Below the pieces are notes generated by a model. The model searched no databases and was not told where the DNA came from. It worked only from the letters and a program-made list of their open reading frames with translations. A DNA stretch of 64,000 nt, taken from NCBI RefSeq assembly GCF_000315625.1, contig NW_005434668.1, positions 115,184-179,183 of the forward strand, written 5' to 3'. The position numbers and the translations under genes were made by a program. This DNA comes from Guillardia theta CCMP2712 (taxonomy: Eukaryota; Protista; Cryptophyta). Of the stretch, positions 4,111-64,000 are shown piece after piece. Position 1 is the stretch's first letter. Every line of letters starts with the position of its first letter.

Positions 4111-12506
<8,396 letters not shown>

Positions 12507-19789: not shown

Positions 19790-20230
19790 CAAACTTGAAA
19801 CCCGGTTCAGAGAACGAGTCGGTTTCAGTGACAGTGACTCGGTGACTGCCAGGCAGTGGGCCGCCGGGCCGGGTGACCGTTGGCGACTTTGTGAGCCGTG
19901 ACAGGCGGTGAGTTACAACCGTGACTACATTGTCAGATCCTTGGAACTTCGGAAGTTCCGATGGGCTCGGTGCCCGGTCCGGTCCGAGTCGGAACTCATT
20001 TCGGGAGCTGACTCACTCTCACTGACCGTCGTGAGCCAGTGGCCCCTGACCGTCACTCTCAGTCGGAGCCAGTGGCCCCGGCCGCCGGTCGGGCCCGGGC
20101 CGGGCCCGGCGAGCGCCGGTGCCGGGCCCCCGGCACACGCCGCCCGGTCACGGGCAACTCAGTCGGACCTTTGCCGACCACAAAAAAATTTCTAGTTGGC
20201 TGGTGGGGCGGCCGGCGGCAATGACTTCAA
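19790..20230. other. Intergenic GC-rich palindromic motif island
   Basis: Dense CCGGG/GGCCC, GTGAC/GTCAC and GAGTC/GACTC words; contains GAACTTCGGAAGTTCCGA (19944-19961), repeated exactly at 54617. Confidence 0.6.
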
Positions 20231-26817: not shown

Positions 26818-27529
26818 TGATATCCGTGGCCGCGACGGATCACCGTGTAACCGCCTTTGACCGCTCTTTGACTTTGGTCTAGGTGCGAGTTTGCGGGAGC
26901 GTATCAGAGCAAAGAAAGCGAAGTTTTCTGAGTCCTGAGCACTCCAAGAAAGCGCAGAAAGAGCGTATCAGAGCTCATAGGATAGCGAGCCCAACACAGG
27001 AGTGGTCAACACTCGAAATGTGGACAGCACACAAGGATAGCCTCTACAACTATCCAGACGAAAGACAGTGATTCTCTAACGGCTACTTTGGTTCAGAAGT
27101 CGGACCCCTCCGGGACGGCTTCCCTATCAAGCACCGGTGGAGCTCTCCTTTCTGGTAGAAACAAGAACAGGAGCAGCGCATGGACCAAAGGGGCCATAGC
27201 GACGGCACGAGGCAGGAAGACTCGTGCAAGCGAGGACCACTACCCCTGGGACTTCCACAGGGCTATAAAAGGATCAAGATCTTCATCTCTAGGTGGTCTG
27301 TCTTCCCTCCCTCTGTGTACCACGCATTTCCCTGTGTTGGTGTGGTTGCTGCAATAAAGCTTGATAATACTGTCTAGCACCTTCTGTGTGATCCAGCGGA
27401 GGTTCTTTGAGCATTCGCTTGGCTTGTGTGCAACCCGTAAAGCTTCGGGGTGTAACATAAATTGGTCACCGTGATCATGACTGTGATAGACAACAGTTAA
27501 GTTATAGTACAAACAATGGCCCGCGCCAG

Positions 27530-28310
27530 TCACGGACCGGCGGCGGGCCCGGGCAGTCCGATCCCGGCGATCACCCGGTCACGGTCCGATCGCCCCCGGC
27601 CGGACATCGGAACCGTCTTCGACGGAGGCCGCGTGTGACTGCCGGCCCCGGTTCATTGAACTGGGGCCGCTGACTCTGAGTGATCCACCGGGAGTCACCG
27701 TTCCGGCCCCGGCGCCGACGATACGGTAGTACGGTCCGTCAGTCCGAGTCAGCTGCTGGTCCGATCCGGCGCTGAGGAGTCGGCCCGGGCCGGGCCGCCG
27801 GGGCCGCCGCGGGGCGGCCGCCGGGGCCGCAAGCCTCAGTGTGTTCGGACTCGGACTGGCCGGGCGACTCGGCACGGGCCGGCGACGGCTCAAGGCTCAG
27901 TGACCGTACTACGGCGACTCCGTCCGGGCCGATCGGCCGGGACTGATCGGACCGTACCGTCACTGTATGAGTCAGCCGCGGGCGGCGGGGCCCCGGCGGG
28001 GGCCGGGCCGCGTGACCGTACTGGCCCCCAACTTAAAACTTTGAGTAACAGGCCCCTCGGACTGGCCGGGCCCAGTGCACTTGGGCCGCCACTTCAAGGC
28101 CCGTCCGAGTCATCACGGCGTGCGGTCCGATCATCCGGGCCTCCCGGCGGCGGTTGGGCCCGCCCCAGTGGCTCTCACTGCGGCCCGGGCCGGCCGCGGG
28201 GCCGGGCCGCATCACGCGGCTGGCCCATTGGGGCCCCCGGCGTCACGGCCGGGCGAGTCAGTTGATCCGATGATCGGCGGACTCGGCGGCGGCGGAAGGA
28301 CTCAATTGAT
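27530..28310. other. Intergenic GC-rich palindromic motif island
   Basis: Same word set as the other islands; AACTTTGAGTAA at 28037-28048 is the reverse complement of the core motif at 51571 and 54550. Confidence 0.6.
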
Positions 28311-44175: not shown

Positions 44176-45542
44176 ATGGAGAACACTCTCTTGCTGTCTC
44201 TCGCTCTCATGATGGCGCAAGTCGCCGGGGGCTCTCTACACACGCACTCAACTTCTTGTGGGTTTGTCGCCCCCTCCTCGGCCATGGTGAACAAGCACCA
44301 CTGCATGGTCGGAGCTCGAGCGAAGGGATGCACGTCGTATCCTGCTCTCTCTCATAGCAGCCAGGTGTCCATGGCGCTTAGGGCACCTAGGATGAGCATG
44401 GACCCGATGCCGAGCGCGCCCAACCCCGTCTCAAAGCTGTGGGGGGAGTGGACAGATATCGAAGTCAAGGCTGCGACAGTGATCTGGGTGAACCGTCTTG
44501 TCATCGGTCTTGATCTCTGTCCCTTTGCCTTAGCGTCCATGCCAGGGCTGAGAGTTGTTGTGTCTAGCGCCATGGACAAGGAGCAAGCGCTCGATACGCT
44601 GGCGGAGGAGATGGGGTACCTTGCTGAGACCCCAAAGGACAAGCCAGCGACGACACTCGTTGTGTTTCCTCCTGCTCTCTTCGACAAGGAGCAGAACGTC
44701 ACCATGATGCTCAAGGGGCTGGAGGACCCAGCGGAAGGGGAGGGGAGGATGGGGAGCCTGTCGCCAGGTGAGGACAACTTGGCGGCGCCTGCAATGGAAG
44801 TGAGGATGAAGGGGGAGATTATGGCGGAGGACGGGGGCGCTGCACCGGTCGCTGCGATGGAGAATTTTGTTGCGGAGGAGACGCAGCTGGGGGAGGAGGA
44901 GGGGGTGAAGGAGCAGTTTTTCAACGAGGTGGAGGTGGACGAGGAAGAGCTCAGGGCGGAAAGCAACTTTGCGAATTTCATGGAGATGGCGTACGAGGCG
45001 ATAGCTCTTTCCCAGGACCTCTTCGGCGACGACGCAGCCAGCGAAATGCTCCTGCTTACCTTCCACCCCAACTCCACCTTCAGCTCCGTCCCCTTCGACC
45101 CAGCGGACTTTGCGCTGCGCTCTCCCTTCCCTACTGTTCACCTGCTGCGGGGGGTGGATATCCGCAAGGCGGAGGAGTCTTGCGAGCGACGGAACAGCAC
45201 GACAGAGGAGATTGCGATGAGAAATGAAGCAAGATTGAGGTAGGAGGAAGGGGAGGAGGGGGAGGGGGGACGGAGGAAGGGGGGGGAGGGGATACAGGAG
45301 AAAAGGGAAGGTGGAGGTAGGGAGGGAGGACTACAAAAAGAGGGATGAGAGGAGGGGTGGAGGGGTCATGGGAGTAGGGGAGGAGAGAGGATGAGTGGGG
45401 AAAGGCTGATGGGGGAGGAGGAGCAGGGAGGAGCAGGGAGGAGGATATGACGCTAACTGAAGATGTCAGGGGCATGGGATACCGCGAGCTCGTGGAGATG
45501 CTGGGCGATATCTACGTGAGAGCCAAGGGGGTGACAGCATGA
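44176..45542 (+). CDS. DUF1415-family protein with organelle-targeting leader and acidic insertion; 2 exons
   Basis: WVNRLVIGLDLCPFA, TTLVVFP, FHP..DPADFALRSPFPTVHLLR; hydrophobic leader MENTLLLSLALMMAQVAG. Confidence 0.8.
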
Positions 45543-45727
45543 GAAGACGAAGCCTGAGGAAGACAAAGACGAGACACGGAGAGGAGACGGGGGGGGAAGC
45601 GGCGGCAGGACGAGGACGAGGACGAGGAGGGAGGGCAGCTTGTTTGGCTAAGTTTTTCGTTGGATGAACATGTCAATACGCGTCTGACTCCTCTCGCTTC
45701 CTCGTTGTTGCCCCTTCTGCGATTCCA

Positions 45728-48700
45728 TCAGAGCTGTGGCCAGTGCGACAGGAGGGGAGGAAGAGGAAGGGAGCAAGAGAGCTAGAAAGGGAGGAAGGAA
45801 GAAAGGAGAGGATGGGAGAGGAGGATTGGAAAGGGACCGGTGAGAAGAGAAGAAGCAAGGAGAGCATCTGTAAGTATGCAGGATCGGATGAGAAAGGAGG
45901 GAGATGGGGTAGGGAAGGGGCCGAACAAGGGGAGGAGAATGTCACGCACCTTTCCCGCTACCTTGGGCTGCTCACCTTGAAGGAGGATAGAGACTGCCGC
46001 CTCCACGTTACCCCGCGCTGCAACGCCCAGGTTACTTCCTCCCTGTCCTTTCCTCCTCGCTCCCCCTATCCTCCCCATTAGCTTCTCTTTCCTCCCCCTC
46101 CTTTTCTCCTCCTTTTCTTCCCCCATTCATCCGCCTCCGCCTCTCCCTCTCCCTCTTCATCTCCTTCCTCCTCTCCGCCTCCTCCTCCTCCACAACCTCC
46201 ATCCCATCCTCCTCTCCCTCCTCCTCTCCCTCCTCTCCGCCGCCTTCTCTCCCTCCTCCTCTCTTCTTCTACCTCCCCTTCCTTTCTTCTACCTCCTCTT
46301 CCTCCTCCTCTACCTCGTTCAAGTGATCGCTGAGCAGCTTCCTTGCCGAATCCCATCTCCATGATTGATTTCACAGCCTCTTCACGTCGGACGTCTTCTC
46401 TGCTCCTCCTCCCCCCACCTTCCTCTCCCTGCTCCTCGACTTCTTTCCTCTTCTCGGCAAGACCCGACGGACTTGCAAGAAGGAACCTCTTCATCAGTCT
46501 CTGAGCATGTTCTCCTGCTTCTCCTCCTCTTGCCTTGGCGCTCTTCCCTTCCGTCTCAAACAGGAACGCCACCGCCACCCTCGTCACGTTCCAGGGGACG
46601 GGGAGTTGCATGCTCTCAATCCCCAGCATCGCTGCTTCCTCCACTCCGCGAGCAGCTTCAGCAATCGCTTCCTCCTTTCCCACGTTGGAGCCAGCTCCTC
46701 TGCTCCTGCTGCTTGCCTCCTCCTCCTGCCCCCTAGCACGAAACGCGAGCCCGTCCTCGAGGCCCCGCTGGAGAGAGCAGAAGGCTTGTGGCACAGCGAC
46801 GCTCTTCGAGCGCATGCCCTCGTACTCCCTGCGAGCATGCACGACGAGCTTGGCAGGGGAAGCATTGCTTCTCCTCCTCTCCTCTATCCACCTGGATACC
46901 AGCTGGCGCGACAGGAGGGAGACAAGCGCCCGCAGGTGACCCGGGGAGGGAGCAGGGGGCAAGAGCGCTCGACGAGCATGCTCTTGGCTCCTCCTCTGTC
47001 CTTGACTTCCTCCCATCGCCCCCCAGAGGGTAGCGAGCAGAGGAAGGAAGCTCTCTCCTTTCCAAACTTCTCCTCTATCACCCTCCGTTCCACCTTTCCC
47101 AGATCCCCCACCAGTCGCACCCCGAGAGCCTCGCATACGCTTCCTCCGAGCTTGCCGCGGAGCGAAGGGATCTGCATGAGAGGGATCGAGCCCATGAAGG
47201 AGGAGACGTGGGGAGGAGGGAGGAGGGTTATCCCGTTAGGTTTGTGAATGCCTGACACCAGCCGCGCTTGCAACTTGTTCCCTCCTATCCCGATGCTGAC
47301 TGAAAGGCCCATCCTCTTGCTCAACTTCTCCTTGATCTCCGTGGCGATTCTGCAGGCTCTCCGCAGGGGAGGAGGGAGGAAGGAAAATGTCACTTCCCCA
47401 AGGATGAAGAGTCTTTCATGCCTCCCCTCCTCCTGCTCCTGCTCCTGCTCCTCCAGCCGCTGCTCCTCCCCTTGACCTGCCCCCTCCCTCCTTCTCACCA
47501 TCTTGGATACATCAAGGTAGAAATCATCATAGGAAGTTTTTTCCACCTCCCCCCACTCCCTCAGTTGTTCCTGCAGCTCCCGCGCGACCTCCCTGTACCT
47601 TTCTGTCCGCATCGGCAGCACGCGCAGGCCAGGGCACTTGACTTTTGCCTCCTCCATGCTCACACGCCCGACCAGCCCCTGCTCCGCATGTTACTTCCCT
47701 TCTTTTTCTCTCTCCGTTCCTCCCCCCATCCTCCTCCTCCATTCCCCCCTCCCCGCCGTCCTTTCTACCCTTGGCGCTTCCTACTTGTCCTTCCCCCGCC
47801 TTCACTTTCTCCCTCTCCCTCTCCTCGTCCTCCTCCTTCCTCATCTTCCCTTCTCACCTTCAGTCTCTCGTTCCCTGCTCGCGCCGCTGCCCGTCCGCCT
47901 GCTCCTGCTGTCAGCCGTGCGACAGCCCCTCCTCGCGCTCTCACCGGCTCCCACCCCATCGCCCTTGCGGATTCCCTTGGCCTTGGCCTCGTAGCTCACA
48001 GCAACAAAGCCTGAGGAGGGTTGAGGGGAGGAAGAAGAGATGGATGGAGGGGAGGAGGAGGAGGAGGAGACAAAGGAGGAAGACAGGCTGAGAAGAAGAG
48101 AGGAAGAGAGGAGCGGAGGAGACACGGAGGATAAAGGGAGGGGATGAACGCAGAGGAGCGGAGAAGCGTTCGCAGGGGGTCGAGCACAGACTCACCTCCG
48201 CTGTTGAACTGCTGGACTGCGATGGGAACATGCAGGAGGGAGGGGTCGTCCATCCTCTCTACCGCACAGTAGAATGCGTCCACATCAACGTGCAGGACGA
48301 CTCGAAGTCGATCCTCCTCCTGCCCCCCCTCTTCCTCCTCGTGCTCCCCCTGCTCCTCCTCCTCCCGACTTCGCAGCATCATGACTCTGCTTGCTGTTTG
48401 ATCCTCGTCCTCGTCCTCTACCTCAGTCTCGCTGACCCTTCCTCCTCAAAAGAGTCCATCTCGTGCCAACATGCGTCAAACTTCTGCTGAAAACGCTCTG
48501 AGTTGCTGTACGAATCTCGGACTCCCTCTCCCTTACCTACCTCCTCCTCCTCCTCCTCCTCCTCCTCCTCCAGGTCCCCTCTACTCCTCTCGTCCTCGCT
48601 TGGATTTTCAGCACGCCCCTCCTGCTTCTTCACTGTCGGATCAAAGATAAAGTCCCGCTCGCCGTCCCCAGCGTCACTGTCGAGATAAATTTCCTCTCCC

Positions 48701-51412
48701 TCCTCCTCTCCCTCCTCCTCTCCCTCCTCCTCCTCCTCATCGTAAAATTCATCCATCGGGCAGATCTCAAAGTCGTCAAACTTGATCTCGCATCCCGCGT
48801 CTCCTTCCATGGCTTCACTTCTGCCTGCATCTTCCCCTCCCTCTCCCTTCGCATCCCCTCCCTCAGCTTGTCCATCGTCCCCGACCCCCTTCCCCACGAG
48901 CCTTGGGGTCATCCCCTCCATCCTGTCGCCCCGCAACAATGCAGATCGTTCTGCTACCATCCGCTCCTGCCTCTTGGACAACAGCCTCTTGTCCTGCATG
49001 CTCTCCAGCCTCTTATCATAGTCCCTCCTCTGCTCAGCCTGCTGCCCCGCAGGGCATCCTCTCCCTTCCTCCTCCGCGCTCTCAAGGCCTTGTTGGAAGC
49101 TCCGAGACTGCAGGAGGGTGCAGGAAGGGATCTTGATGAAATTCATGACTGCAAGGTTGATGAGAGTGAGGTGAAACGGCTCGCTAACGTTCCTCCTCAG
49201 CACCGTCATCGCAACTGCAACCACCTACAACAGAGCATTCACCTTTGTCGGCTCTCCTCATCACATAACATCCTCCTCACCTGCCTCACTGCTTCCTCCT
49301 CCCTCTGTCCCCTCTGCTGCAGACGGCAGGCAAGAACGGGCGGCAGCCGCGTGCTTGCACTCTGTCGTCCACCATGATAAGACGACTTGTGCCGCCAGGT
49401 GATGATCAGGCACTCAGGGACCCTCCTGTTCTCCTCCGCATCCTCCAGCACGCGAGCGATAAGGTCAGGAGCAAGCACTTGCAGGACAAGCTCAGCCTGA
49501 GGATCAGAGTCAGAGTCAGAGTCAAAGGAGGAGGATGAGGAGGAGGAGGAGGAGCAGTAGGGTTTGGAAAAACTCCTGCAAAATCGGGGAGAGCAGCGGG
49601 GTCAACAAAGAGGAGGGATGGGGATATAGCACACGGCAATCAGCTGTTGGAAAGGAGGAGGGAGAAGAGGGAGCATGAACACGAAAGGGAGGGAGGGAGG
49701 GAGGGAGGGAGGGAGGGAGGGAGGGANNNNNNNNNNNNNNNNNNNNNNNNNNNNNNNNNNNNNNNNNNNNNNNNNNNNNNNNNNNNNNNNNNNNNNNNNN
49801 NNNNNNNNNNNNNNNNNNNNNNNNNNTCAACCATGTTGAAATACAACTAAGAGAAGGAGATCGCTTACGGGCTTTAAAAGCTTAAGTGAGAAACTGTGAA
49901 GGTTATTTCAGACGGATTTCGTTTTATGCAATGCATGTGATGCAGCTGCGGATGTTGTACGTGTTGTTTGACTTGTATTTGAAACAGGCCGCTCCAGCAA
50001 ATACATCCATGCTGCGCATTTTCCGGACAGTGCCTTTGATCGTCTTGCGGGGAGATTCTGGCTGTTCAGATTGCTTTGATACGCCACCTGCTGTTGTCGG
50101 GTGGGATCTTGGATTTCCTGACGTCACGAATCCTACCTATCAAGTCGAGCCGTACTCGTGGAAGTATATTGATGATGGTCGTGACAAGTACTGTTCCGAA
50201 TGCTTTGAGGGAGGGAGGGAGGGAGGGAGGGAGAGACTAGGAGGGAGGAATAGCTCACAGCAGAGAAGGAGGAGCAGGACTTGAACGAGTCCTCAACGCT
50301 AATCCTCTTGGGAGCTCCGTTGGTGACCACGGGGCTCTTGTCTCTTCCCCGTGCTGCCTCGTACAACTGTATCCCCGCCCTCACCCCGAGCTGACTCGTC
50401 AACTGCTCCCTCCTCATCCTCCTCAGGTCTCGTACAAGCTCCACTCCCATCTCCTGCAGGAGCGAGCACGTCTTGTACCCCGCTCCTCGTATCGCCCGGA
50501 TTGAGAGCGGAGCGATGAACTCAGCTGCCTCCGAGGACGGCAAGCTCGTCTGATCGTCCGGCTTGTGCAGACCCGACGCAAGTTTCGCAAGCAGCTTGTT
50601 GTGTGCGATGCCTGCTGATGTCCGGATGCCAGTCTCCTCCTTCACCGCCCCCTCGCCTTCCGTGCAATCTCGCTGCCCAGCTGCAGAAGAATGTCGGAGG
50701 CAGACGCGGCCCCCTCGTCGCAAGTAGCCTCCTTCCTCTCGCTCTTGTTGCTCACGCGCACATCCATCGGCCGGTACACGTTGTCACTGTGAACTGCCTC
50801 GCTGCTCCTGTGCACGTGCCCCTGCCATCGTCTCTCCGCGTTCTCCTCCATCATCTTCTTGCATGCTGCAGTGACGTCTACCCAGACCTCGTCCATCCCT
50901 AGCCGTTCAGCAGCGCTTCCGAACCTCTGCAGCACGGAGAAGATCCTCCTGCTGGTCAGCCTGTAGGGCGTCAGGTCCTCGCCACTCACCAGCACGAGCC
51001 CAGGACATTTCTTCTTCGCATCCTCGATCGCCATGAGCTTGGTGACTCCTGCTCTCCGTGCCGGGTAGTTGCACGTCACCACCAGAAACTTCTGCGTTAT
51101 CCCCAGCGGAACCTCCCTCAGCTTCGGGTCCCGTAGCTCCTCCACTTGCGCGTAGAAGCAGTCGGCATCGAAGTGCAGGATGACACGGTCTGTGTCTGGC
51201 TCCCCGATGTCCAGCGAGAGGGATGGATCGTCCTGCAGCTCGTCCCTGTCGCTTTGCTCCTCATACTCGCAGCTTCCATACCCCTCATTGCATTCGAAGC
51301 TCGCTTCCTTCCCTTGGCTGCTTCTTGCAAACTTGTGCGCGCGGAAGTCTTCATAGCCTCTCTTCGACAACCTGGTGCTCTTCATTGAAAGCGGATGCTT
51401 GAACGAGGCCAC
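45728..51412 (-). CDS. Y-family DNA polymerase: Pol iota-like domain + acidic linker + second Y-family domain + C-terminal UBA; two apparent 1-nt frameshifts
   Basis: Domain 1: ILHFDADCFYAQVE, QKFLVVTCNYPAR, GEDLTPYR, LGMDEVWVD, GIAHNKLLAKL, FHLTLINL. Domain 2: VLHVDVDAFYCAVE, AVSYEAKAKG, EKTSYDDFYLD, GIGGNKLQARL. UBA: SIMEMGFGKEAAQRSLERARGNVEAAVSILL. Confidence 0.8.
49727..49826. other. Assembly gap (100 N) following a (GGGA)n repeat
   Basis: Run of N characters. Confidence 1.
50009..50210 (+). CDS. Short Cys-motif ORF antisense within a polymerase intron (nested gene or misassembled fragment)
   Basis: MLRIFRTVPLIVLRGDSGCSDCFD...KYCSECFE with an internal CSxCF repeat; runs into (GGGA)n without a stop. 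Confidence 0.35.
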
Positions 51413-51567: not shown

Positions 51568-52230
51568 TCTTTACTCAAAGTTAAGTTAAAGATCGGTACG
51601 AGGACAATCATGCCACTAGTCACATCGCTACACTGAGCCGAGCCTCGAGTCACCCGGGCCGGCGCAGCGCCGCGCCCGCAGCCGGGCCGGCGCCGCCTGC
51701 CCGGCGGGCCGCTCCGAGGCTCAGAGTCAGGCTCCTGACTGATGGATCGCATGCCAGCCGTGCCTCAGTACTTGTCACAGTGCTCCGTCTCTGACCGTGA
51801 CACTCAGGGTCTGACCGTGACTGGTCCGGGACTCGGACTCTGTCGGAGAGGCCGCGGCCGACTCGGCGAGGCCCGTTAACTTGATGCCAAGGTCCGAGCA
51901 AGCTGCCCAGGCTGGCAGTTGCCGGGGGTTGCGCCAAGTGGCTCCTGGCCGCTCCGTGATGGAGTGCCCGGCCCGGGAGTCCGTTTGCCGCAGTGGCCGT
52001 TACTGCAAAAAGTAACTGAGTCACTGAGTTGCGACCGAATAGAACTTACACTGCCCCCCCGCGGCCAGTGGGCCGGGCAGTGACCGTGACTCGCGGGGTC
52101 ACGAGTATCACAGTTCCGTTTGCTGCACTCAGGCTCAGTGAGGCGCCCCCCGGGACGGTCAGGCTACCGTAGTAACCGTTAGGGAAAAATACAAAGATAG
52201 TTCTCCTGCAGAAGCTTTCGGAAGCGTCCG
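51568..52230. other. Intergenic GC-rich palindromic motif island
   Basis: Starts with TCTTTACTCAAAGTTAA (51568-51584), identical to 54547-54563; rich in GTGAC, GAGTC and CCGGG. Confidence 0.6.
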
Positions 52231-54469: not shown

Positions 54470-55160
54470 TGCTTTCGGAGTTCCGTATCGTAATTCATAA
54501 AACTTGATATCCGATGATCGCCGAGTCCCTCGGCGGCGGGATCGGATCTTTACTCAAAGTTAAATCAGTACGGCGGTTTAGAACGGAAATCATCAATTTC
54601 CAATCAACAAACCGGCGAACTTCGGAAGTTCCGAAGTTCCGGGCCGTTCAGCCTCAGCCGCTAGTATCAGTCGCCGCATTCCGGAACGGAGTTCGGAAGT
54701 TCCGAACGTTCCGGCGAGCGGGGGCCCGGCATCACGGATGAACAGTCCGATCACCGGGGCTGCCGCCGCCGGTCACCTGCGCCGCGATTCGGAGGTTCCG
54801 GCGCGGGGGCCGGCGGGCCGATCCGCCGATCAGATCCGATCCGGGCCCGGGACACCGGCGTGACTCGGCGGACCGTACTCTGGGATGCACCGAGGCGCGG
54901 CACCGTCCGCCGGGCCCGTGACCGTCGGACCGTCGCCGGCCGGGCCTGGACTTTTGCCGCGTGACCGTTCGACGGTGACGGTGACGCCGGGCCCGAGTTG
55001 CCAGTGAACCGCCGGTCCTGCGGACGGTTCAACGGTTACCGGGTCTTGCGGCTGCTGCGCACGGGCGCGGCGGCTCCTTTGTAGCCTAGTAGTGTGACTA
55101 AACTTGACCGTACCCGAGTCCAGTGACTAGGGGGCGGCGCCGGCGGCGGTATCAGTCTTG
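54470..55160. other. Intergenic GC-rich palindromic motif island
   Basis: Carries both shared motifs (54547-54563 and 54617-54634) plus several TTCGGAA/TTCCGAA words. Confidence 0.6.
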
Positions 55161-57109: not shown

Positions 57110-57420
57110 CAGCATGGCGCGGGGCACCGGGGCCCCGCCGCCGGGCCCCGTGAACTTGGAAGGTAAACTGAAGTCACTGAAGCTTTCGGACCGAAGCTGA
57201 GTAATCAAGTAAGTTCCAGGCCGCAAACTTTCCGAAGCCTGAAGAGCCGCCCCCAGTTTCGAAGTTCAAAGGACGAGGACAATCAGGAGAGTAGAGGAAT
57301 GGCGATCCGAGTCCGATCATCCCGAGTCACGCCCCGGCGCGGCACTGAGAGTCACGCGCGGCGGCCGACGGCGGCCCGGGCCGGGCCCGCCGATTGGAAT
57401 CGACTCACTGTCATGTAGTG
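57110..57420. other. Intergenic GC-rich palindromic motif island
   Basis: GGGCCC, GAGTC, GTCAC and TTCGGA/TTCCGAA words as in the other islands. Confidence 0.5.
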
Positions 57421-61001: not shown

Positions 61002-64000
61002 ATGGTCTTTTGTCCATGCGGCATCTTGCTCACAGGGTCCTCTCGCTGGCAGATGGCTGACGGATGCATACCTGGTCGAGTTCTTCTCAGCGGACCATTG
61101 GCAACTGCTTCCAACCTCATGGCAGCACTTCTTCAAACTTCTTTCCCCATCCTCCTGTCAAAGAATCGCGTCGCAATGCTCTTCTCCTCTCCTCTTTCTT
61201 CAGGCTCTTCTTGCCGAGGCTTCTTTTTCCAGGTTCCAGTACATTCCTGCAACCATGCTTCCATGAGACTGCCCTTGGCTCTCCTCCAGTACCCGTCAAC
61301 ACGCTCCCCCTCCCCCCCTCTTCCTTCCTGTGCTCTGGTACTGACTTGCGTCTCCTCTCTGATCTGTCCCCATCTACCACCTTCCATACTTCCCTTCGTA
61401 GCGCGGGCCCTCCCCCTCTTTCCCTGCAGGCTTTGCTTGTCCTCCTCGACCAAACTTGTTTGCCGAGGGCATGCGATGAAGGGCAGGACATGCTGTGTTT
61501 CGATGTACATGGGAGAGCGGACACGTTTCGTCTGAATATGGAAGAGATCGGGGAGAACAGTGAGCTTGACAGCCTGTTGAGCTGGAAGATGAACTCAAAG
61601 AAGAAGTACGAAGTCGTCAGGTCGATGCAGAAGAATGAACATCTGGCTGCTGATATCGTGTTTGTTTGCAATCCCAGATTAGCCAAGTTTATAGACTTGA
61701 TGATCAAACGGGTGGGAATGTGCTTTTCCAATTATGGAGTGTAAACATCTTTATTTCAGAGGCGACCAGACGATTCAGGACGCGAACTCTGTGTTGTTGA
61801 TGTTGGTTCTGGGCAGAGTCATTTGAGCAGGTAGAGTTTGAGCTTGACGAAACGAGAGAAATGAGTTCCACACAGAGTTCTTGCATGGAAGTATGGATAT
61901 GATGTCAAGACACTCGAATCCAACTCCTGCAACGTAGCGACTGCAAGACACATCGACAAGCATGTCTGTGGTTGATCGCGCGAGATTTACAAGTGACGCA
62001 CCGTTTGCCTTCAGTTTCAGTACGAAAGATCCAAGAGAGAAGAAGATCAAGTCGATGTAAAGATTGATGATTCCAGCGTGAAGAGGGGAGAACTGCATCA
62101 TATCAAGTGAGTTCGGACAATTGCTGGTGTGGTTGCTCACTATCGTTTGTTTTGAAAGCTGTGAGCTGCAGGCCTTTGTGGAACCAACGAAGTTTCTCAA
62201 GATGTTGGGTATGCGCGATCGTTGCAACCAAGTCATGTGCTTGACAAAAAACGAAGATGATCGTCAAGATGAGTTGTCTTCATTGTCAAGTACAAGAGTC
62301 TTGCATGTCGTCTTACATTCAGAGTTACAAGTCGGGTAGATGATGATTGGAATCTGGCGCTTGTTGGGTTGCACCCTTGTGGAGATCTCATTCCAACAAT
62401 GCTCAACCTGTTCTCTCAGCTGAAACAGGTGAACATGGACATGTTGTAAGATCCGACAATGATGTTTGACAGGTCAAGCTTGTTTGTGCGGTTGGATGCT
62501 GTTACATGTGGTTGAGTGAAGCTACGGGAGAGGAGTGGAAACATGGAAATCATCACAACTTGTATGGATTTCCGCTGAGCAAGGCACTCAAAGAGTTGAA
62601 TGAGAAGCATGAAGATAATGACGGTCTCGGTTACCTTGCAAGAGAACTTGCCTGTCATTGCAACGAGAGGTGAGATTGTAAATGTTTCTTCTCATATCGG
62701 TATCTGTTGCGTATCATGTTAGAGGGCAGAATGCCTGTGCTTGAGCTGCTACTGCCGATGATGTCATTTATGATGATGCCGATGATGATTCTTATGATGC
62801 TGCTGGTGCTGGGGCTGGTGCTGGTGCTGGGGCTGGTGCTGGTGCTGGCGCTGGTGCTGCTGTTGTAGTCATTGATGATGATGATGATGATGGTAGTGAT
62901 GGTGGAGGTGGTGGTGATGGTGGTGGTGATGATGATGGTGGTGGTGGGGAGGAGGAGGAGGAGGTGGTGGTGGTGGTGGTGGTGGAGGAGGAGGAGGAGG
63001 AGGAGGAGGAGGACGAAATGACCATAATTCAGATATTCTCAACGAGCCATGCGCGAGATCGACGACGAATTGTCATCGTCGAGATGCCATTGTTACCGGG
63101 TGAGATCAATATGAAAACCAAGGACTACACATCGGCTTCAATGCTTATGTAATGGTCATGAAGATGATGATGAAGGTGATGGTGGGGATGATGGCGATGA
63201 CGGAGACAACTGCAATGATGTAGGAAAGTGTGAAGATGGAGATGTTGGTGTTGGTTGAAGCTGCTCGTGGTGATTGTTTGTATTGGTGAAGGCAGCAGAA
63301 TGTATTGTGGAGGTATCATGATGATTGTCTTTGCAGGCAGTCCTGCAGCTTTTGATTTCAGATGTTGTGAAAGTTATCGAGCACGAGCGAGAAAAGGCAA
63401 AAGAGGATGGGACGGAGGAAGAGAAACGAAAGCAGAGGATGGCGAGGACGGAGCGAGGGAACAGCGGGCTAGCGAGGAAGTAGGAGAAGGAAGAAGAGGA
63501 CATGGAAAAGATTCGGAAGAGACTGATGGTGAAGGAACGGAAAGGCCAGGAGAAAGAGCGGGGGGGGGAGGCAGGAGCAAAAACAACAGCAGCACAAGCA
63601 AGAGCAAGGGCAGAAGGATCACCAGGAGAAGGAGCAGGAGGGGGAGGGGCAGAAGGGGGAGGGGCAGAAGGGGGAGGGGCAAGTGTTTCAACGGCAGACA
63701 AGAAAACGTTTGACCGACTGGTGGAGCATGTGAAGAGTGGGGGAAAAATCTCAAGAATCCAAGGGATCAACCGAGTGAAGATGAGGAGGTAGAGGAGGAG
63801 ACTCAAGGGAGCGAGAGTGAGGTCAGGGGGGGGGAGGGGGAGGAAGGGGGGAGGAAGAGCGGGAGGGAAAGATAGATGCATGGATGAAGGGAAGAAGGAC
63901 GAGGGAGGGAGGGAGGGAGGGAGAGAGAGAGAGAGGAGGGAGGGAGGAGGGAGGGAGGGTAGGTTCGTTACGGAAAGGGAAGAAGTGGGAAGGAACGCAC
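61002..64000 (+). CDS. METTL25/RRNAD1-like SAM-dependent methyltransferase; multi-exon; ends not resolved
   Basis: MNSKKKYEV, VVDVGSGQSHLS (~61793), LVGLHPCGDL (~62360), AVGCCY (~62490), later YRAR. Confidence 0.75.

What the first reader, a model, noticed from the sequence alone, without database searches (positions are those of the whole stretch)
45728..51412. Two Y-family polymerase catalytic domains apparently in one polypeptide
Seen: a full Pol iota-like unit (palm to little finger) is followed by an acidic linker, then a second unit starting VLHVDVDAFYCAVE and ending in a UBA domain. A 53-nt GT..AG intron (48421-48369) removes the only stop between them in frame. Otherwise just 35 nt separate the stop (48418) from the next ATG (48382), too short for an intergenic region. 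Unit 2 has SYDD in place of the usual SIDE motif and a GDGVGAG fingers insertion. Known: translesion synthesis often uses inserter and extender polymerase pairs, with ubiquitin-binding domains for recruitment. Inference: a fused two-polymerase TLS enzyme, or an active plus regulatory pair.
Basis: partly seen in the sequence, partly recalled or inferred. Interest (0 to 1): 0.75.

Follow-up and report, generated by a model that had tools for sequence, protein, structure and literature searches.

The report
Two translesion DNA polymerases, one gene
This cryptophyte alga (almost certainly Guillardia theta) carries its copy of an undescribed algal gene that puts two complete damage-bypass DNA polymerases, one Pol iota-like and one diverged Pol eta-like, into one protein, but in this assembly the two halves are separated by a stop and each half has a one-base frame break that I could not check against reads.

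Summary
Two complete Y-family polymerase cores lie head to tail on the minus strand, 51385 to 45648. Unit 1 is Pol iota-type. Unit 2 belongs to a separate, strongly supported clade nearest Pol eta; S[Y/C]DD replaces SIDE and there is a KGDGVG fingers insertion. It ends in a split UBA and a PIP-like box. The assembly gap lies inside an intron and hides no coding sequence.

The same iota-like then eta-like order occurs in single proteins of many green algae, including uninterrupted 1112- and 1124-aa ORFs on metagenome contigs. Both window units are orthologous to their halves.

Two things are not settled:
- **The join here.** The 53-nt intron is one of 55 frame-joining GT..AG pairs. Its donor matches another donor in this gene, but its AAG acceptor is atypical.
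- **The frame breaks.** They are either assembly errors or real lesions.

I put about 0.65 on one ~1,300-aa protein in this alga and about 0.95 on a fused family. I found no paper describing it.

The parts
51618..51750 (.). GC-rich, strand-balanced island upstream of the gene; promoter-type region (inferred)
   Evidence: It is the only such island near the locus, and none lies between the two units. Earlier scan notes call such islands promoter-side; I did not verify that.
50259..51385 (-). Exon 1, unit 1: fingers, palm and thumb of a Pol iota-type core. The start is the first ATG of the open frame (inferred).
   Evidence: IMS 4e-30 and IMS_HHH_1 4e-10. Human Pol iota 5e-39 against Pol eta 2e-16. 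Coordinates.
50648..50652 (-). G5 run where the unit 1 frame breaks; one extra G would restore ...ARKARGAVKEETGI...
   Evidence: Frames. There is a gap-free match in length to L010 (GARARAAVREQVGV) and to the Y-family palm helix.
49497..50258 (-). Intron 1 (762 nt as assembled), holding the assembly gap 49727-49826 flanked by (CCCT)n
   Evidence: GTGAGC...CCTCAG. The flanking exons are colinear with uninterrupted P0003.
49281..49496 (-). Exon 2, unit 1 little finger (first part)
   Evidence: tblastn with P0003 345-406 and P0173.
49225..49280 (-). Intron 2, 56 nt
   Evidence: GTGAGG...TTGTAG. A frame change is needed to reach ...EPFHLTLINL....
48422..49224 (-). Exon 3: end of the unit 1 little finger, then a ~240-aa acidic linker with the motif RRDY..LSKRQER
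   Evidence: One open frame of 268 codons. The motif is shared with the Pleodorina fused protein (E 7e-4) and with L010.
48369..48421 (-). Junction: TAG 48420-48418, a second unit-1-frame stop at 48381-48379, and the candidate 53-nt intron. The unit 2 frame is open from 48445.
   Evidence: The donor GAG|GTAGAGGA is identical to the intron 6 donor. The acceptor AAG differs from the 7 of 7 YAG acceptors.
48196..48382 (-). First unit 2 exon (from ATG 48382, or from 48368 if spliced): motif I, VVLHVDVDAFYCAVE
   Evidence: IMS positions 1-30. 44% identity to P0151.
47945..48010 (-). Unit 2 exon: FVAVSYEAKAKGIRKGDGVGA
   Evidence: 76% identity to P0151 353-385.
47858..47898 (-). 41-nt mini-exon continuing the fingers insertion (GRAAARAGNERLK)
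   Evidence: 88% identity to P0151 375-390. Flanked by a 46-nt and a 179-nt GT..CAG intron.
46314..47678 (-). Main unit 2 exon: rest of fingers and palm (SYDD), thumb, little finger, spacer and the first half of the UBA
   Evidence: IMS 2e-19 and POLH-Rev1_HhH 2e-8. 70% identity to Hanusia phi P0001. Human Pol eta 4e-20.
46955..46959 (-). C5 run where the unit 2 frame breaks; one extra C would give SCPPAPSPGHL, as in Hanusia (SCPPAPSPAHL)
   Evidence: Two tblastn segments in different frames abut here. Frames.
46018..46313 (-). Intron 6 (296 nt, 90% purine), splitting the UBA.
   Evidence: The donor and acceptor restore a UBA with the same spacing as the uninterrupted UBA of P0004.
45976..46017 (-). 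Exon with the second half of the UBA (RGNVEAAVSILLQ)
   Evidence: Frame reading. Colinear with P0004, which reads SKGSVSAAIQLL.
45648..45733 (-). Last exon: PIP-like box QTRIDMFI and TAG 45650-45648
   Evidence: Frame reading. Relatives end in QRGIASFF (P0004) and QTLIASFL (L010).

Best explanation
The locus is one transcription unit on the minus strand, about 51385 to 45648, with nine exons by my model. It is the cryptophyte orthologue of a conserved algal gene for a double translesion polymerase.

Inferred product:
- The protein is about 1,300 aa.
- The N-terminus is a complete Pol iota-type core (fingers, palm, thumb, little finger).
- A ~240-aa acidic, probably disordered linker follows.
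- Next comes a second complete core from a separate Rad30-type clade nearest Pol eta. It has S[Y/C]DD instead of SIDE and a ~25-residue KGDGVG insertion in the fingers.
- The C-terminus carries one UBA and one PIP-like box.

Inferred mechanism:
- The single ubiquitin-binding and PCNA-binding tail brings both active sites to ubiquitinated PCNA at a stalled fork.
- The two polymerases, which have different lesion preferences, can then act in turn or as alternatives without a separate recruitment step. This hard-wires the Pol eta-Pol iota partnership that human cells achieve by protein-protein contact.

State of this assembly:
- The reading frame is interrupted three times. There are one-base breaks in a G5 run and a C5 run, and a stop plus frame change at the junction.
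- I think the junction is most likely removed by a short intron starting at GT 48421, or else is another one-base error.

Shown: the two cores, their orthology, and fused orthologues elsewhere. Inferred: the single product in this alga, activity of both cores, and the recruitment model.
For: 1. Both cores are present, with acidic catalytic residues. Unit 1 has DADCFY and GMDE; unit 2 has DVDAFY and SYDD.
2. Unit 1 matches human Pol iota at 5e-39 against Pol eta at 2e-16. Unit 1 of the orthologue P0003 gives 4e-72 against 2e-43.
3. Single proteins with two IMS domains in the same order occur in Pleodorina, Edaphochlamys, Volvox, Astrephomene, Apatococcus, Botryococcus, Micractinium, Nannochloris, Auxenochlorella and [Myrmecia].
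4. P0006 (L008:1976-5314, 1112 aa) and P0003 (L009:8001-11375, 1124 aa) are uninterrupted ORFs on eukaryotic metagenome contigs.
5. In the tree, the window's unit 1 pieces fall in the U1 clade (100/99) and unit 2 in the U2 clade (100/100), with Hanusia phi as sister.
6. The nearest genomic relative, L010, has the same tandem order. Its 320-aa linker and unit 2 lie in one open frame.
7. The window's post-little-finger extension shares RRDY..LSKxxER with the linker of the Pleodorina fused protein.
8. Only 35 nt separate the stop from the ATG, and no promoter-type island lies between the units.
9. The junction donor GAG|GTAGAGGA is identical over 11 nt to the donor of the UBA-splitting intron. 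That 11-mer occurs 4 times in the window against 0.06 expected.
10. Introns of 46 and 56 nt exist in this gene.
11. Exon phases close only if each homopolymer break is given one extra base.
Against:
- As assembled, a TAG and a frame change separate the units, and an ATG follows 35 nt later. That is also what a gene fission would look like.
- The 53-nt candidate ends in AAG, whereas all seven homology-supported introns end in CAG or TAG.
- 55 GT..AG pairs join the frames, so finding one is not significant.
- In the unit 2 frame the same 11-mer reads as ordinary coding sequence (EVED), as it does at 11468.
- Two one-base frame breaks inside conserved core sequence could mean the gene is decaying in this strain.
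Confidence: 0.65

Rival explanations
1. Gene fission. The ancestral fused gene has split in Guillardia. Unit 1 ends at TAG 48418 with an acidic tail. Unit 2 starts at ATG 48382 and is made from an internal transcription start or by reinitiation, giving two separate polymerases.
For: Stop, frame change and an ATG-ATG 35 nt downstream. Members of the unit 2 clade that may stand alone exist, such as P0010, which starts with Met. The AAG acceptor is atypical.
Against: 35 nt is too short for a 3' end plus a promoter and 5' UTR. No promoter-type island lies upstream of unit 2. The unit 2 frame is open for 21 codons upstream of the ATG. Every relative with enough sequence has unit 2 preceded by at least 300 in-frame codons or by unit 1. 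P0010 groups tightly with unit 2 of the Nannochloris fused protein, so it may itself be a partial call.
Confidence: 0.15
2. Decaying gene. The three interruptions are real mutations (two one-base deletions in homopolymers and one in the linker). This laboratory strain no longer makes either polymerase intact, and the fused gene is functional only in relatives.
For: Two frame breaks inside conserved core sequence. Earlier notes of this scan report real one-base frameshifts in other genes of this genome (unchecked by me).
Against: Apart from the three sites there is no in-frame stop or other lesion in about 3.9 kb of coding sequence. Unit 2 is 70% identical to Hanusia over both frames. All three sites need the same correction, one missing base, which is also what a systematic sequencing error gives. 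Other scan notes report one-base assembly errors in this genome, contradicted by mRNA (unchecked by me). Runs guessed to be RNA hold up to 64% of the sampled words of 46400-49700.
Confidence: 0.15
3. Chance neighbours. Two independent Y-family genes happen to lie in tandem, and the fused proteins elsewhere are gene-prediction merges.
For: Many of the named green-algal entries are automatic gene models from intron-rich genomes.
Against: P0003 and P0006 are single uninterrupted ORFs. The P0006 cluster has five members from separate ENA and Logan records. Both halves are orthologous across cryptophyte and green-algal copies. The same order and strand recur in every case.
Confidence: 0.03

Closest known systems
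DNA polymerase iota (POLI/Rad30B), e.g. human Pol iota, PDB 2dpi
   Same: Unit 1 is about as similar to it as a distant orthologue would be: 5e-39 over the first 120 core residues. It has the Pol iota thumb family PF21999, the GxDE motif, and QKFLVVTCNY against human QKYLVVTCNY. Published work reports POLI genes in green algae and microalgae (PMC8595933).
   Different: It is followed by a long acidic linker and a second polymerase instead of the UBM1/UBM2 tail. No UBM or PIP was recognised in the linker.
DNA polymerase eta (POLH/Rad30A), e.g. human Pol eta, PDB 3mr6
   Same: It is the best solved match of unit 2 (4e-20; 8e-30 for the L010 orthologue). Outside its own clade the next hits are annotated Pol eta of animals and a liverwort. 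Unit 2 has the POLH-Rev1 HhH thumb and a C-terminal ubiquitin-binding module plus a PIP-like box.
   Different: S[Y/C]DD replaces SIDE (Glu116 to Asp). There is a ~25-residue insertion after the position of Arg61, which is Lys here. UBA replaces UBZ. The clade is separate, at 100/100, from the Pol eta references, and its position relative to them is unresolved. The genome already has a plant-type POLH (contig 13) and a second eta-like gene (contig 22) with SIDE.
Unnamed green-algal two-IMS proteins (e.g. Auxenochlorella protothecoides P0178, Edaphochlamys debaryana P0171, Pleodorina starrii GLC60262), filed as 'hypothetical protein', 'UmuC domain-containing protein' or 'DNA polymerase eta'
   Same: Same domain order, and both halves are orthologous to those of the window.
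   Different: They are green algae and this is a cryptophyte. Their linkers are 120-600 aa and differ in sequence. In the window the join is not a plain open frame. I found no paper describing them.
Human Pol eta-Pol iota partnership (Kannouche et al. 2002 EMBO J 21:6246; McIntyre et al. 2013 NAR 41:1649, as listed in PMC4904029)
   Same: The same two kinds of polymerase act together. [quoted passage not shown]
   Different: In humans they are two proteins that associate. In these algae they form a covalent fusion with a single recruitment tail.
Pol epsilon catalytic subunit (two tandem family-B polymerase modules in one chain; from my own knowledge)
   Same: It is the best-known case of two polymerase folds in one polypeptide.
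   Different: It is family B, and its second module is catalytically dead and structural. Here both modules are family Y and both keep their catalytic acids.

Membership tests
Y-family DNA polymerase (Pfam IMS, PF00817), unit 1 | IMS palm/fingers domain above Pfam's cut-off | tested here: met
   105 bits against a cut-off of 23.2.
Y-family DNA polymerase (Pfam IMS, PF00817), unit 1 | Catalytic acids: DxD in motif I and DE in motif III | tested here: met
   HFDADCFY and LGMDEVWVD in the open frames.
Y-family DNA polymerase (Pfam IMS, PF00817), unit 2 | IMS domain above the cut-off, plus thumb and little finger | tested here: met
   70.4 bits and POLH-Rev1_HhH 34.7 bits. The orthologue aligns to human Pol eta up to residue 384, inside the little finger.
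Y-family DNA polymerase (Pfam IMS, PF00817), unit 2 | Catalytic acids: DxD and D-E | tested here: inconclusive
   DVD is present. Motif III is D-D, not D-E. The pair is invariant in 7 of 7 aligned clade members and in all unit 2 sequences scanned, which argues for function, but activity with Asp is untested.
Pol iota subfamily (unit 1) | Closer to Pol iota than to any other Y-family branch | tested here: met
   5e-39 against 2e-16 for Pol eta. PF21999 thumb. Orthologue P0003 gives 4e-72 against 2e-43.
Pol iota subfamily (unit 1) | C-terminal ubiquitin-binding motifs (UBM) and PIP/RIR of animal Pol iota | tested here: not met
   No Pfam family in the 268-aa extension. No LP-centred UBM was seen by eye.
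Pol eta subfamily (unit 2) | SIDE motif, with Glu116 as the third catalytic acid | tested here: not met
   SYDD.
Pol eta subfamily (unit 2) | Groups with bona fide Pol eta in a tree | tested here: inconclusive
   It forms its own clade at 100/100. The branching among the eta, U1 and U2 clades is unresolved. Against PDB, eta and iota are nearly tied for some members.
Pol eta subfamily (unit 2) | UBZ zinc finger plus PIP box at the C-terminus | tested here: not met
   The window has a UBA-like domain instead and a PIP-like QTRIDMFI. The prasinophyte member P0005 does have a UBZ.
Algal double Y-family polymerase (iota-like + S[Y/C]DD unit) | Both halves orthologous to the halves of the fused proteins | tested here: met
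   U1 clade 100/99 and U2 clade 100/100.
Algal double Y-family polymerase (iota-like + S[Y/C]DD unit) | Same order and strand, with no other gene between | tested here: met
Algal double Y-family polymerase (iota-like + S[Y/C]DD unit) | One continuous coding sequence (one mRNA, one protein) | tested here: inconclusive
   As assembled, a TAG and a frame change intervene. A plausible intron or a one-base error would remove them.

The most novel reading that the evidence does not exclude
A widespread but undescribed class of eukaryotic translesion enzyme exists in green algae and cryptophytes. In it, two catalytically active Y-family polymerases (Pol iota-type and a new S[Y/C]DD Rad30-type clade) are covalently tethered and share one ubiquitin/PCNA-binding tail. 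The polymerase switch between inserter and partner would then happen within one molecule. This would be a natural 'Rosetta stone' for the Pol eta-Pol iota partnership of animals.
Probability: 0.55. Interest if true: 0.75.

Novelty: new variant of a known kind. Interest (0 to 1): 0.62.

Why it matters
Translesion synthesis is usually explained as a relay between separate polymerases that compete for ubiquitinated PCNA. A natural protein with two complete Y-family cores and one recruitment tail would be a ready-made test of that model.
- Each active site can be mutated on its own, to ask whether bypass of a given lesion needs both, in which order, and whether tethering changes fidelity.
- It gives independent, evolutionary support for a functional link between Pol iota-type and Pol eta-type enzymes.
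- It defines a new, conserved Rad30-type clade (S[Y/C]DD, KGDGVG fingers insertion) whose lesion specificity is unknown.
- For annotation, dozens of algal entries now labelled 'hypothetical' or 'DNA polymerase eta' are in fact double polymerases.

Tried and rejected
There is therefore no read evidence. By my model they lie in intron 6.
- **Linker ORF word search:** blank.
- **Search with Hanusia P0001** found no protein of this species of 258-820 aa. The region search with P0019 found none of 685-2179 aa.
- **Exact look-ups of two window ORFs:** nothing on record.
- **Metagenome scan with the single exon:** nothing. With alignment A1 it gave 12 loci, none closer than L024. L024 turned out to be of the P0008 type, and its upstream little finger was not confirmed by Pfam, so I do not use it as junction evidence.
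- **Linker similarity between the window and L010's 320-aa linker:** not significant by BLAST. I dropped the transitivity argument built on an acidic-aromatic motif.
- **Programmed -1 frameshifting:** no X XXY YYZ slippery site in 48445-48421 (read).
- **Joined models:** All searches were exon by exon, by reference. The 1,306-aa length is arithmetic on coordinates. Only a local script joined up to 270 nt around the junction, to enumerate splice candidates.
- **Literature searches:** no description of fused Y-family polymerases.

Full report
**What is there**

The finding lies on the minus strand. Pfam finds two separate IMS (impB/mucB/samB, PF00817) cores.
- ORF 50642-51412 scores E 4e-30.
- The next frame (50133-50723) holds the IMS tail and the Pol iota thumb family PF21999 (4e-10).
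- ORF 47996-48382 holds the first 30 IMS positions.
- ORF 46884-47663 holds the rest (2e-19) plus the Pol eta/Rev1 HhH thumb (2e-8).
- ORF 46078-47136 holds a UBA-like half-domain (2e-4, just under the cut-off).

Against solved structures, the first exon of unit 1 matches human Pol iota at 5e-39 and Pol eta at only 2e-16. It reads QKFLVVTCNY where human Pol iota reads QKYLVVTCNY. From memory, that is the fingers segment that shapes Pol iota's narrow active site. Unit 2 matches Pol eta at 4e-20 and Pol iota at 1e-17.

The window is contig 6 of an 87.1-Mb, 669-contig genome. Its closest protein relative is from the cryptophyte Hanusia phi (71% identity). Earlier notes of this scan name the genome Guillardia theta.

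**Gene model**

I built the model exon by exon from frame translations and local tblastn with orthologues.
- Exon 1: ATG 51385 to 50259.
- Intron 1: 50258-49497.
- Exon 2: 49496-49281.
- Intron 2: 49280-49225 (56 nt).
- Exon 3: 49224-48422. It holds the end of the little finger and then a ~240-aa acidic linker.
- Junction: see below.
- Unit 2 exons: (48382 or 48368)-48196, 48010-47945, a 41-nt mini-exon 47898-47858, 47678-46314, 46017-45976 and 45733-45648.

The UBA is split by a 296-nt, 90%-purine intron. Splicing it gives the same helix spacing as the uninterrupted UBA of relative P0004. The last exon encodes a PIP-like box (QTRIDMFI) before TAG 45650-45648. Relatives end in QRGIASFF and QTLIASFL.

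**The assembly gap**

N 49727-49826 lies inside intron 1, between (CCCT)n tracts. The flanking exons read SSFSA|AELVLQVLAPDL. The uninterrupted orthologue P0003 reads SSFAAVDKVIDCLAPDL, with the same number of residues. Both splice sites are phase 0. No coding sequence is hidden in the gap, and the frame is consistent across it.

- *G5 run, 50652-50648.* The unit 1 frame runs into TGA, and the conserved palm helix continues in the next frame. One more G gives ...ARKARGAVKEETGIRTSAGIAHNK.... This is gap-free in length against L010 (GARARAAVREQVGV...GIAHNK) and against the Y-family consensus.
- *C5 run, 46959-46955.* The Hanusia protein aligns in one frame up to ERSCP and in the next frame from PAPSPGHLRAL. 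One more C gives SCPPAPSPGHL, and Hanusia has SCPPAPSPAHL.

With one base added at each site, all exon phases close, and the total with the 53-nt splice is 3,921 nt, or 1,306 codons (arithmetic). I cannot tell error from mutation. Earlier notes of this scan report both one-base assembly errors contradicted by mRNA and real one-base frameshifts in this genome. These are unchecked leads only.

**The junction**

The unit 1 frame ends at TAG 48420-48418, with a second stop at 48381-48379. Unit 2 is in another frame, which is open from 48445. Its first ATG is at 48382, and exactly 35 nt lie between stop and ATG.

It is not special statistically. 55 GT..AG pairs of at least 30 nt (95 with GC donors) join the frames without a stop, 8 of them no longer than 80 nt.

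In its favour:
- Introns of 46 and 56 nt exist in this gene.
- Its donor context GAG|GTAGAGGA is identical over 11 nt to the donor of the UBA-splitting intron.
- That 11-mer occurs 4 times in the window against 0.06 expected.
- A third copy, at 63786, also ends an open frame with an immediate TAG.

Against it:
- Its acceptor is AAG, while all seven homology-supported introns end in CAG or TAG.
- In the unit 2 frame the same letters read as ordinary acidic coding sequence (EVEDEDED), as the copy at 11468 does.

The alternatives are a 35-nt intron to the CAG at 48387, or one missing base within 48445-48422, the same kind of defect as the two breaks above. I saw no slippery site for programmed frameshifting.

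**Evidence from elsewhere**

A full HMMER search with the main unit 2 exon returned long proteins in which the match lies in the second half. Pfam shows two IMS domains in each, the first with the Pol iota thumb and the second with the Pol eta/Rev1 HhH. Named sources:
- Pleodorina starrii (1245-1683 aa)
- Edaphochlamys debaryana (1463 aa)
- Volvox africanus
- Astrephomene gubernaculifera
- Apatococcus (1067 and 1952 aa)
- Botryococcus braunii (1628 aa)
- Micractinium (1475 aa)
- Nannochloris (1256 aa)
- Auxenochlorella protothecoides (1142 aa)
- [Myrmecia] bisecta

These are gene models. However, P0006 (L008:1976-5314) and P0003 (L009:8001-11375) are single uninterrupted ORFs of 1112 and 1124 aa. 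They sit on intron-poor eukaryotic metagenome contigs with eukaryotic neighbours (THOC7, FKBP/NPL, XPD-type helicase). The P0006 cluster has five members from separate records. Unit 1 of P0003 matches Pol iota at 4e-72 against Pol eta at 2e-43.

In a maximum-likelihood tree of 35 rows:
- The two unit 1 pieces of the window fall in a clade with the first halves of the fused proteins (100/99).
- Unit 2 falls in a clade with their second halves (100/100). Within it, the window, Hanusia and two metagenome lineages form a subclade (100/97).
- Rows left out: P0184 (no second motif I by my pattern), the Volvocales other than Edaphochlamys, and animal Pol iota (none held as a file).

The nearest genomic relative, L010, has 48% identity in unit 2. 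It has iota-like exons followed on the same strand by a 774-aa open frame that contains a 320-aa linker and unit 2 without interruption. The window's post-little-finger extension shares RRDY..LSKxQER with L010 and with the linker of the Pleodorina protein (E 7e-4).

**What unit 2 is**

All members read EK[TA]S[YC]DDFY, where Pol eta has ERASIDEAY. The two Asp are invariant in alignment A1. All have KGDGVG followed by about 20 more residues, inserted just after the position of human Arg61, which is Lys here. Outside the clade the next hits are annotated Pol eta of insects, an ascidian, sea urchins and a liverwort. Against PDB, eta and iota are nearly tied for some members, and the tree leaves the order of the three clades open.

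I therefore call it a separate Rad30-type clade nearest Pol eta, not Pol eta itself. The genome also has a plant-type POLH on contig 13, a second SIDE-type eta-like gene with a UBA on contig 22, and a Rev1-like gene on contig 10. Unit 2 is therefore an extra paralogue.

**How it most likely works**

Shown:
- Two complete cores, both with acidic catalytic residues.
- One ubiquitin-binding-type domain and one PIP-like box, only at the far C-terminus.
- A long acidic linker without recognisable domains.

Inferred:
- The tail docks on ubiquitinated PCNA, as for other Y-family enzymes (PMC4904029), and brings both active sites to the stalled primer end.
- The flexible linker lets either core engage, so the two cover different lesions or act one after the other.
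- Human Pol eta and Pol iota localise together and interact physically (Kannouche 2002 and McIntyre 2013, as cited in PMC4904029). The algal fusion would be the covalent version of that partnership.
- The 'active plus regulatory' reading has no support, since neither core has lost its catalytic acids.

**Novelty**

Four full-text searches found no description of fused or tandem Y-family polymerases. A survey of POLI distribution notes POLI in green algae and microalgae but mentions no fusion (PMC8595933). The proteins sit in public databases as 'hypothetical protein', 'UmuC domain-containing protein' or 'DNA polymerase eta'. I rate it a new variant of a known kind.

**Verdict**
- Observation: partly confirmed. 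Everything described is there, the gap is harmless, and two frame breaks and a mini-exon were missed.
- Interpretation: partly supported. The fusion is real as a family (about 0.95). One protein in this alga is likely (about 0.65) but unproven. The specific 53-nt intron is only one candidate.

Noticed in passing
window 46306-46316, 48414-48424, 11468-11478 (all minus strand), 63786-63796 (plus strand): The 11-mer GAGGTAGAGGA occurs 4 times against 0.06 expected. One copy is a homology-supported splice donor, one ends an open frame with an immediate TAG (63786), and one reads as coding EVEE (11468). GTAGAGG may be a common donor type in this genome's purine-rich genes.
   Followed up: partly
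own genome G000: C22:6858-7553 (L001), C13:183727-184511 (L004/L006), C10:206575-207024 (L002): There are three further Y-family genes: an eta-like gene with SIDE and a C-terminal UBA in a 681-codon open frame, a plant-type POLH, and a Rev1-like gene. The IMS search returned no DinB/Pol kappa-type hit, but it scores only the best candidates.
   Followed up: partly
P0008 (1045 aa), L024:721-1419; also P0038, P0091, P0097: Other double Y-family architectures exist. In P0008 an eta-like first half, not an iota-like one, precedes an S[Y/C]DD unit. P0091 and P0097 (1381-1475 aa) carry an eta-like motif I and a second, Rev1-like DMDCFF motif. Their sources and reality were not checked.
   Followed up: no
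window about 48930-49020 (minus strand); L010:9583-9810; P0019 about 545-575: A short basic motif, RR(D/E)Y...(I/L)LSKx(R/Q)ERxx(R/A)E, is conserved in the linker of cryptophyte, L010 and Volvocales copies. Its function is unknown.
   Followed up: partly
P0001 (Hanusia phi, EukProt) residues about 437-469, against window intron 46313-46018: The transcript-derived Hanusia protein reads on past ...ALERG into Gly-rich sequence instead of the second half of the UBA. This could be a retained intron or an alternative C-terminus.
   Followed up: no
window 51618-51750; also 216-295, 20026-20181, 27517-28270, 54740-54967, 57306-57410: These are short, strand-balanced islands of at least 78% G+C with recurring GAGTCAC/CAGTCAC-like words. 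One lies 230-365 nt upstream of this gene's ATG. Earlier scan notes describe such islands as promoter-side.
   Followed up: no
window 49690-49726 and 50205-50235 (minus strand): (CCCT)n microsatellite tracts lie at both ends of the gap-bearing intron. They probably caused the assembly gap.
   Followed up: no
window 44176-45243 (plus strand): A 355-codon open frame converges on the 3' end of the polymerase gene, about 400 nt from its stop. It was not examined.
   Followed up: no
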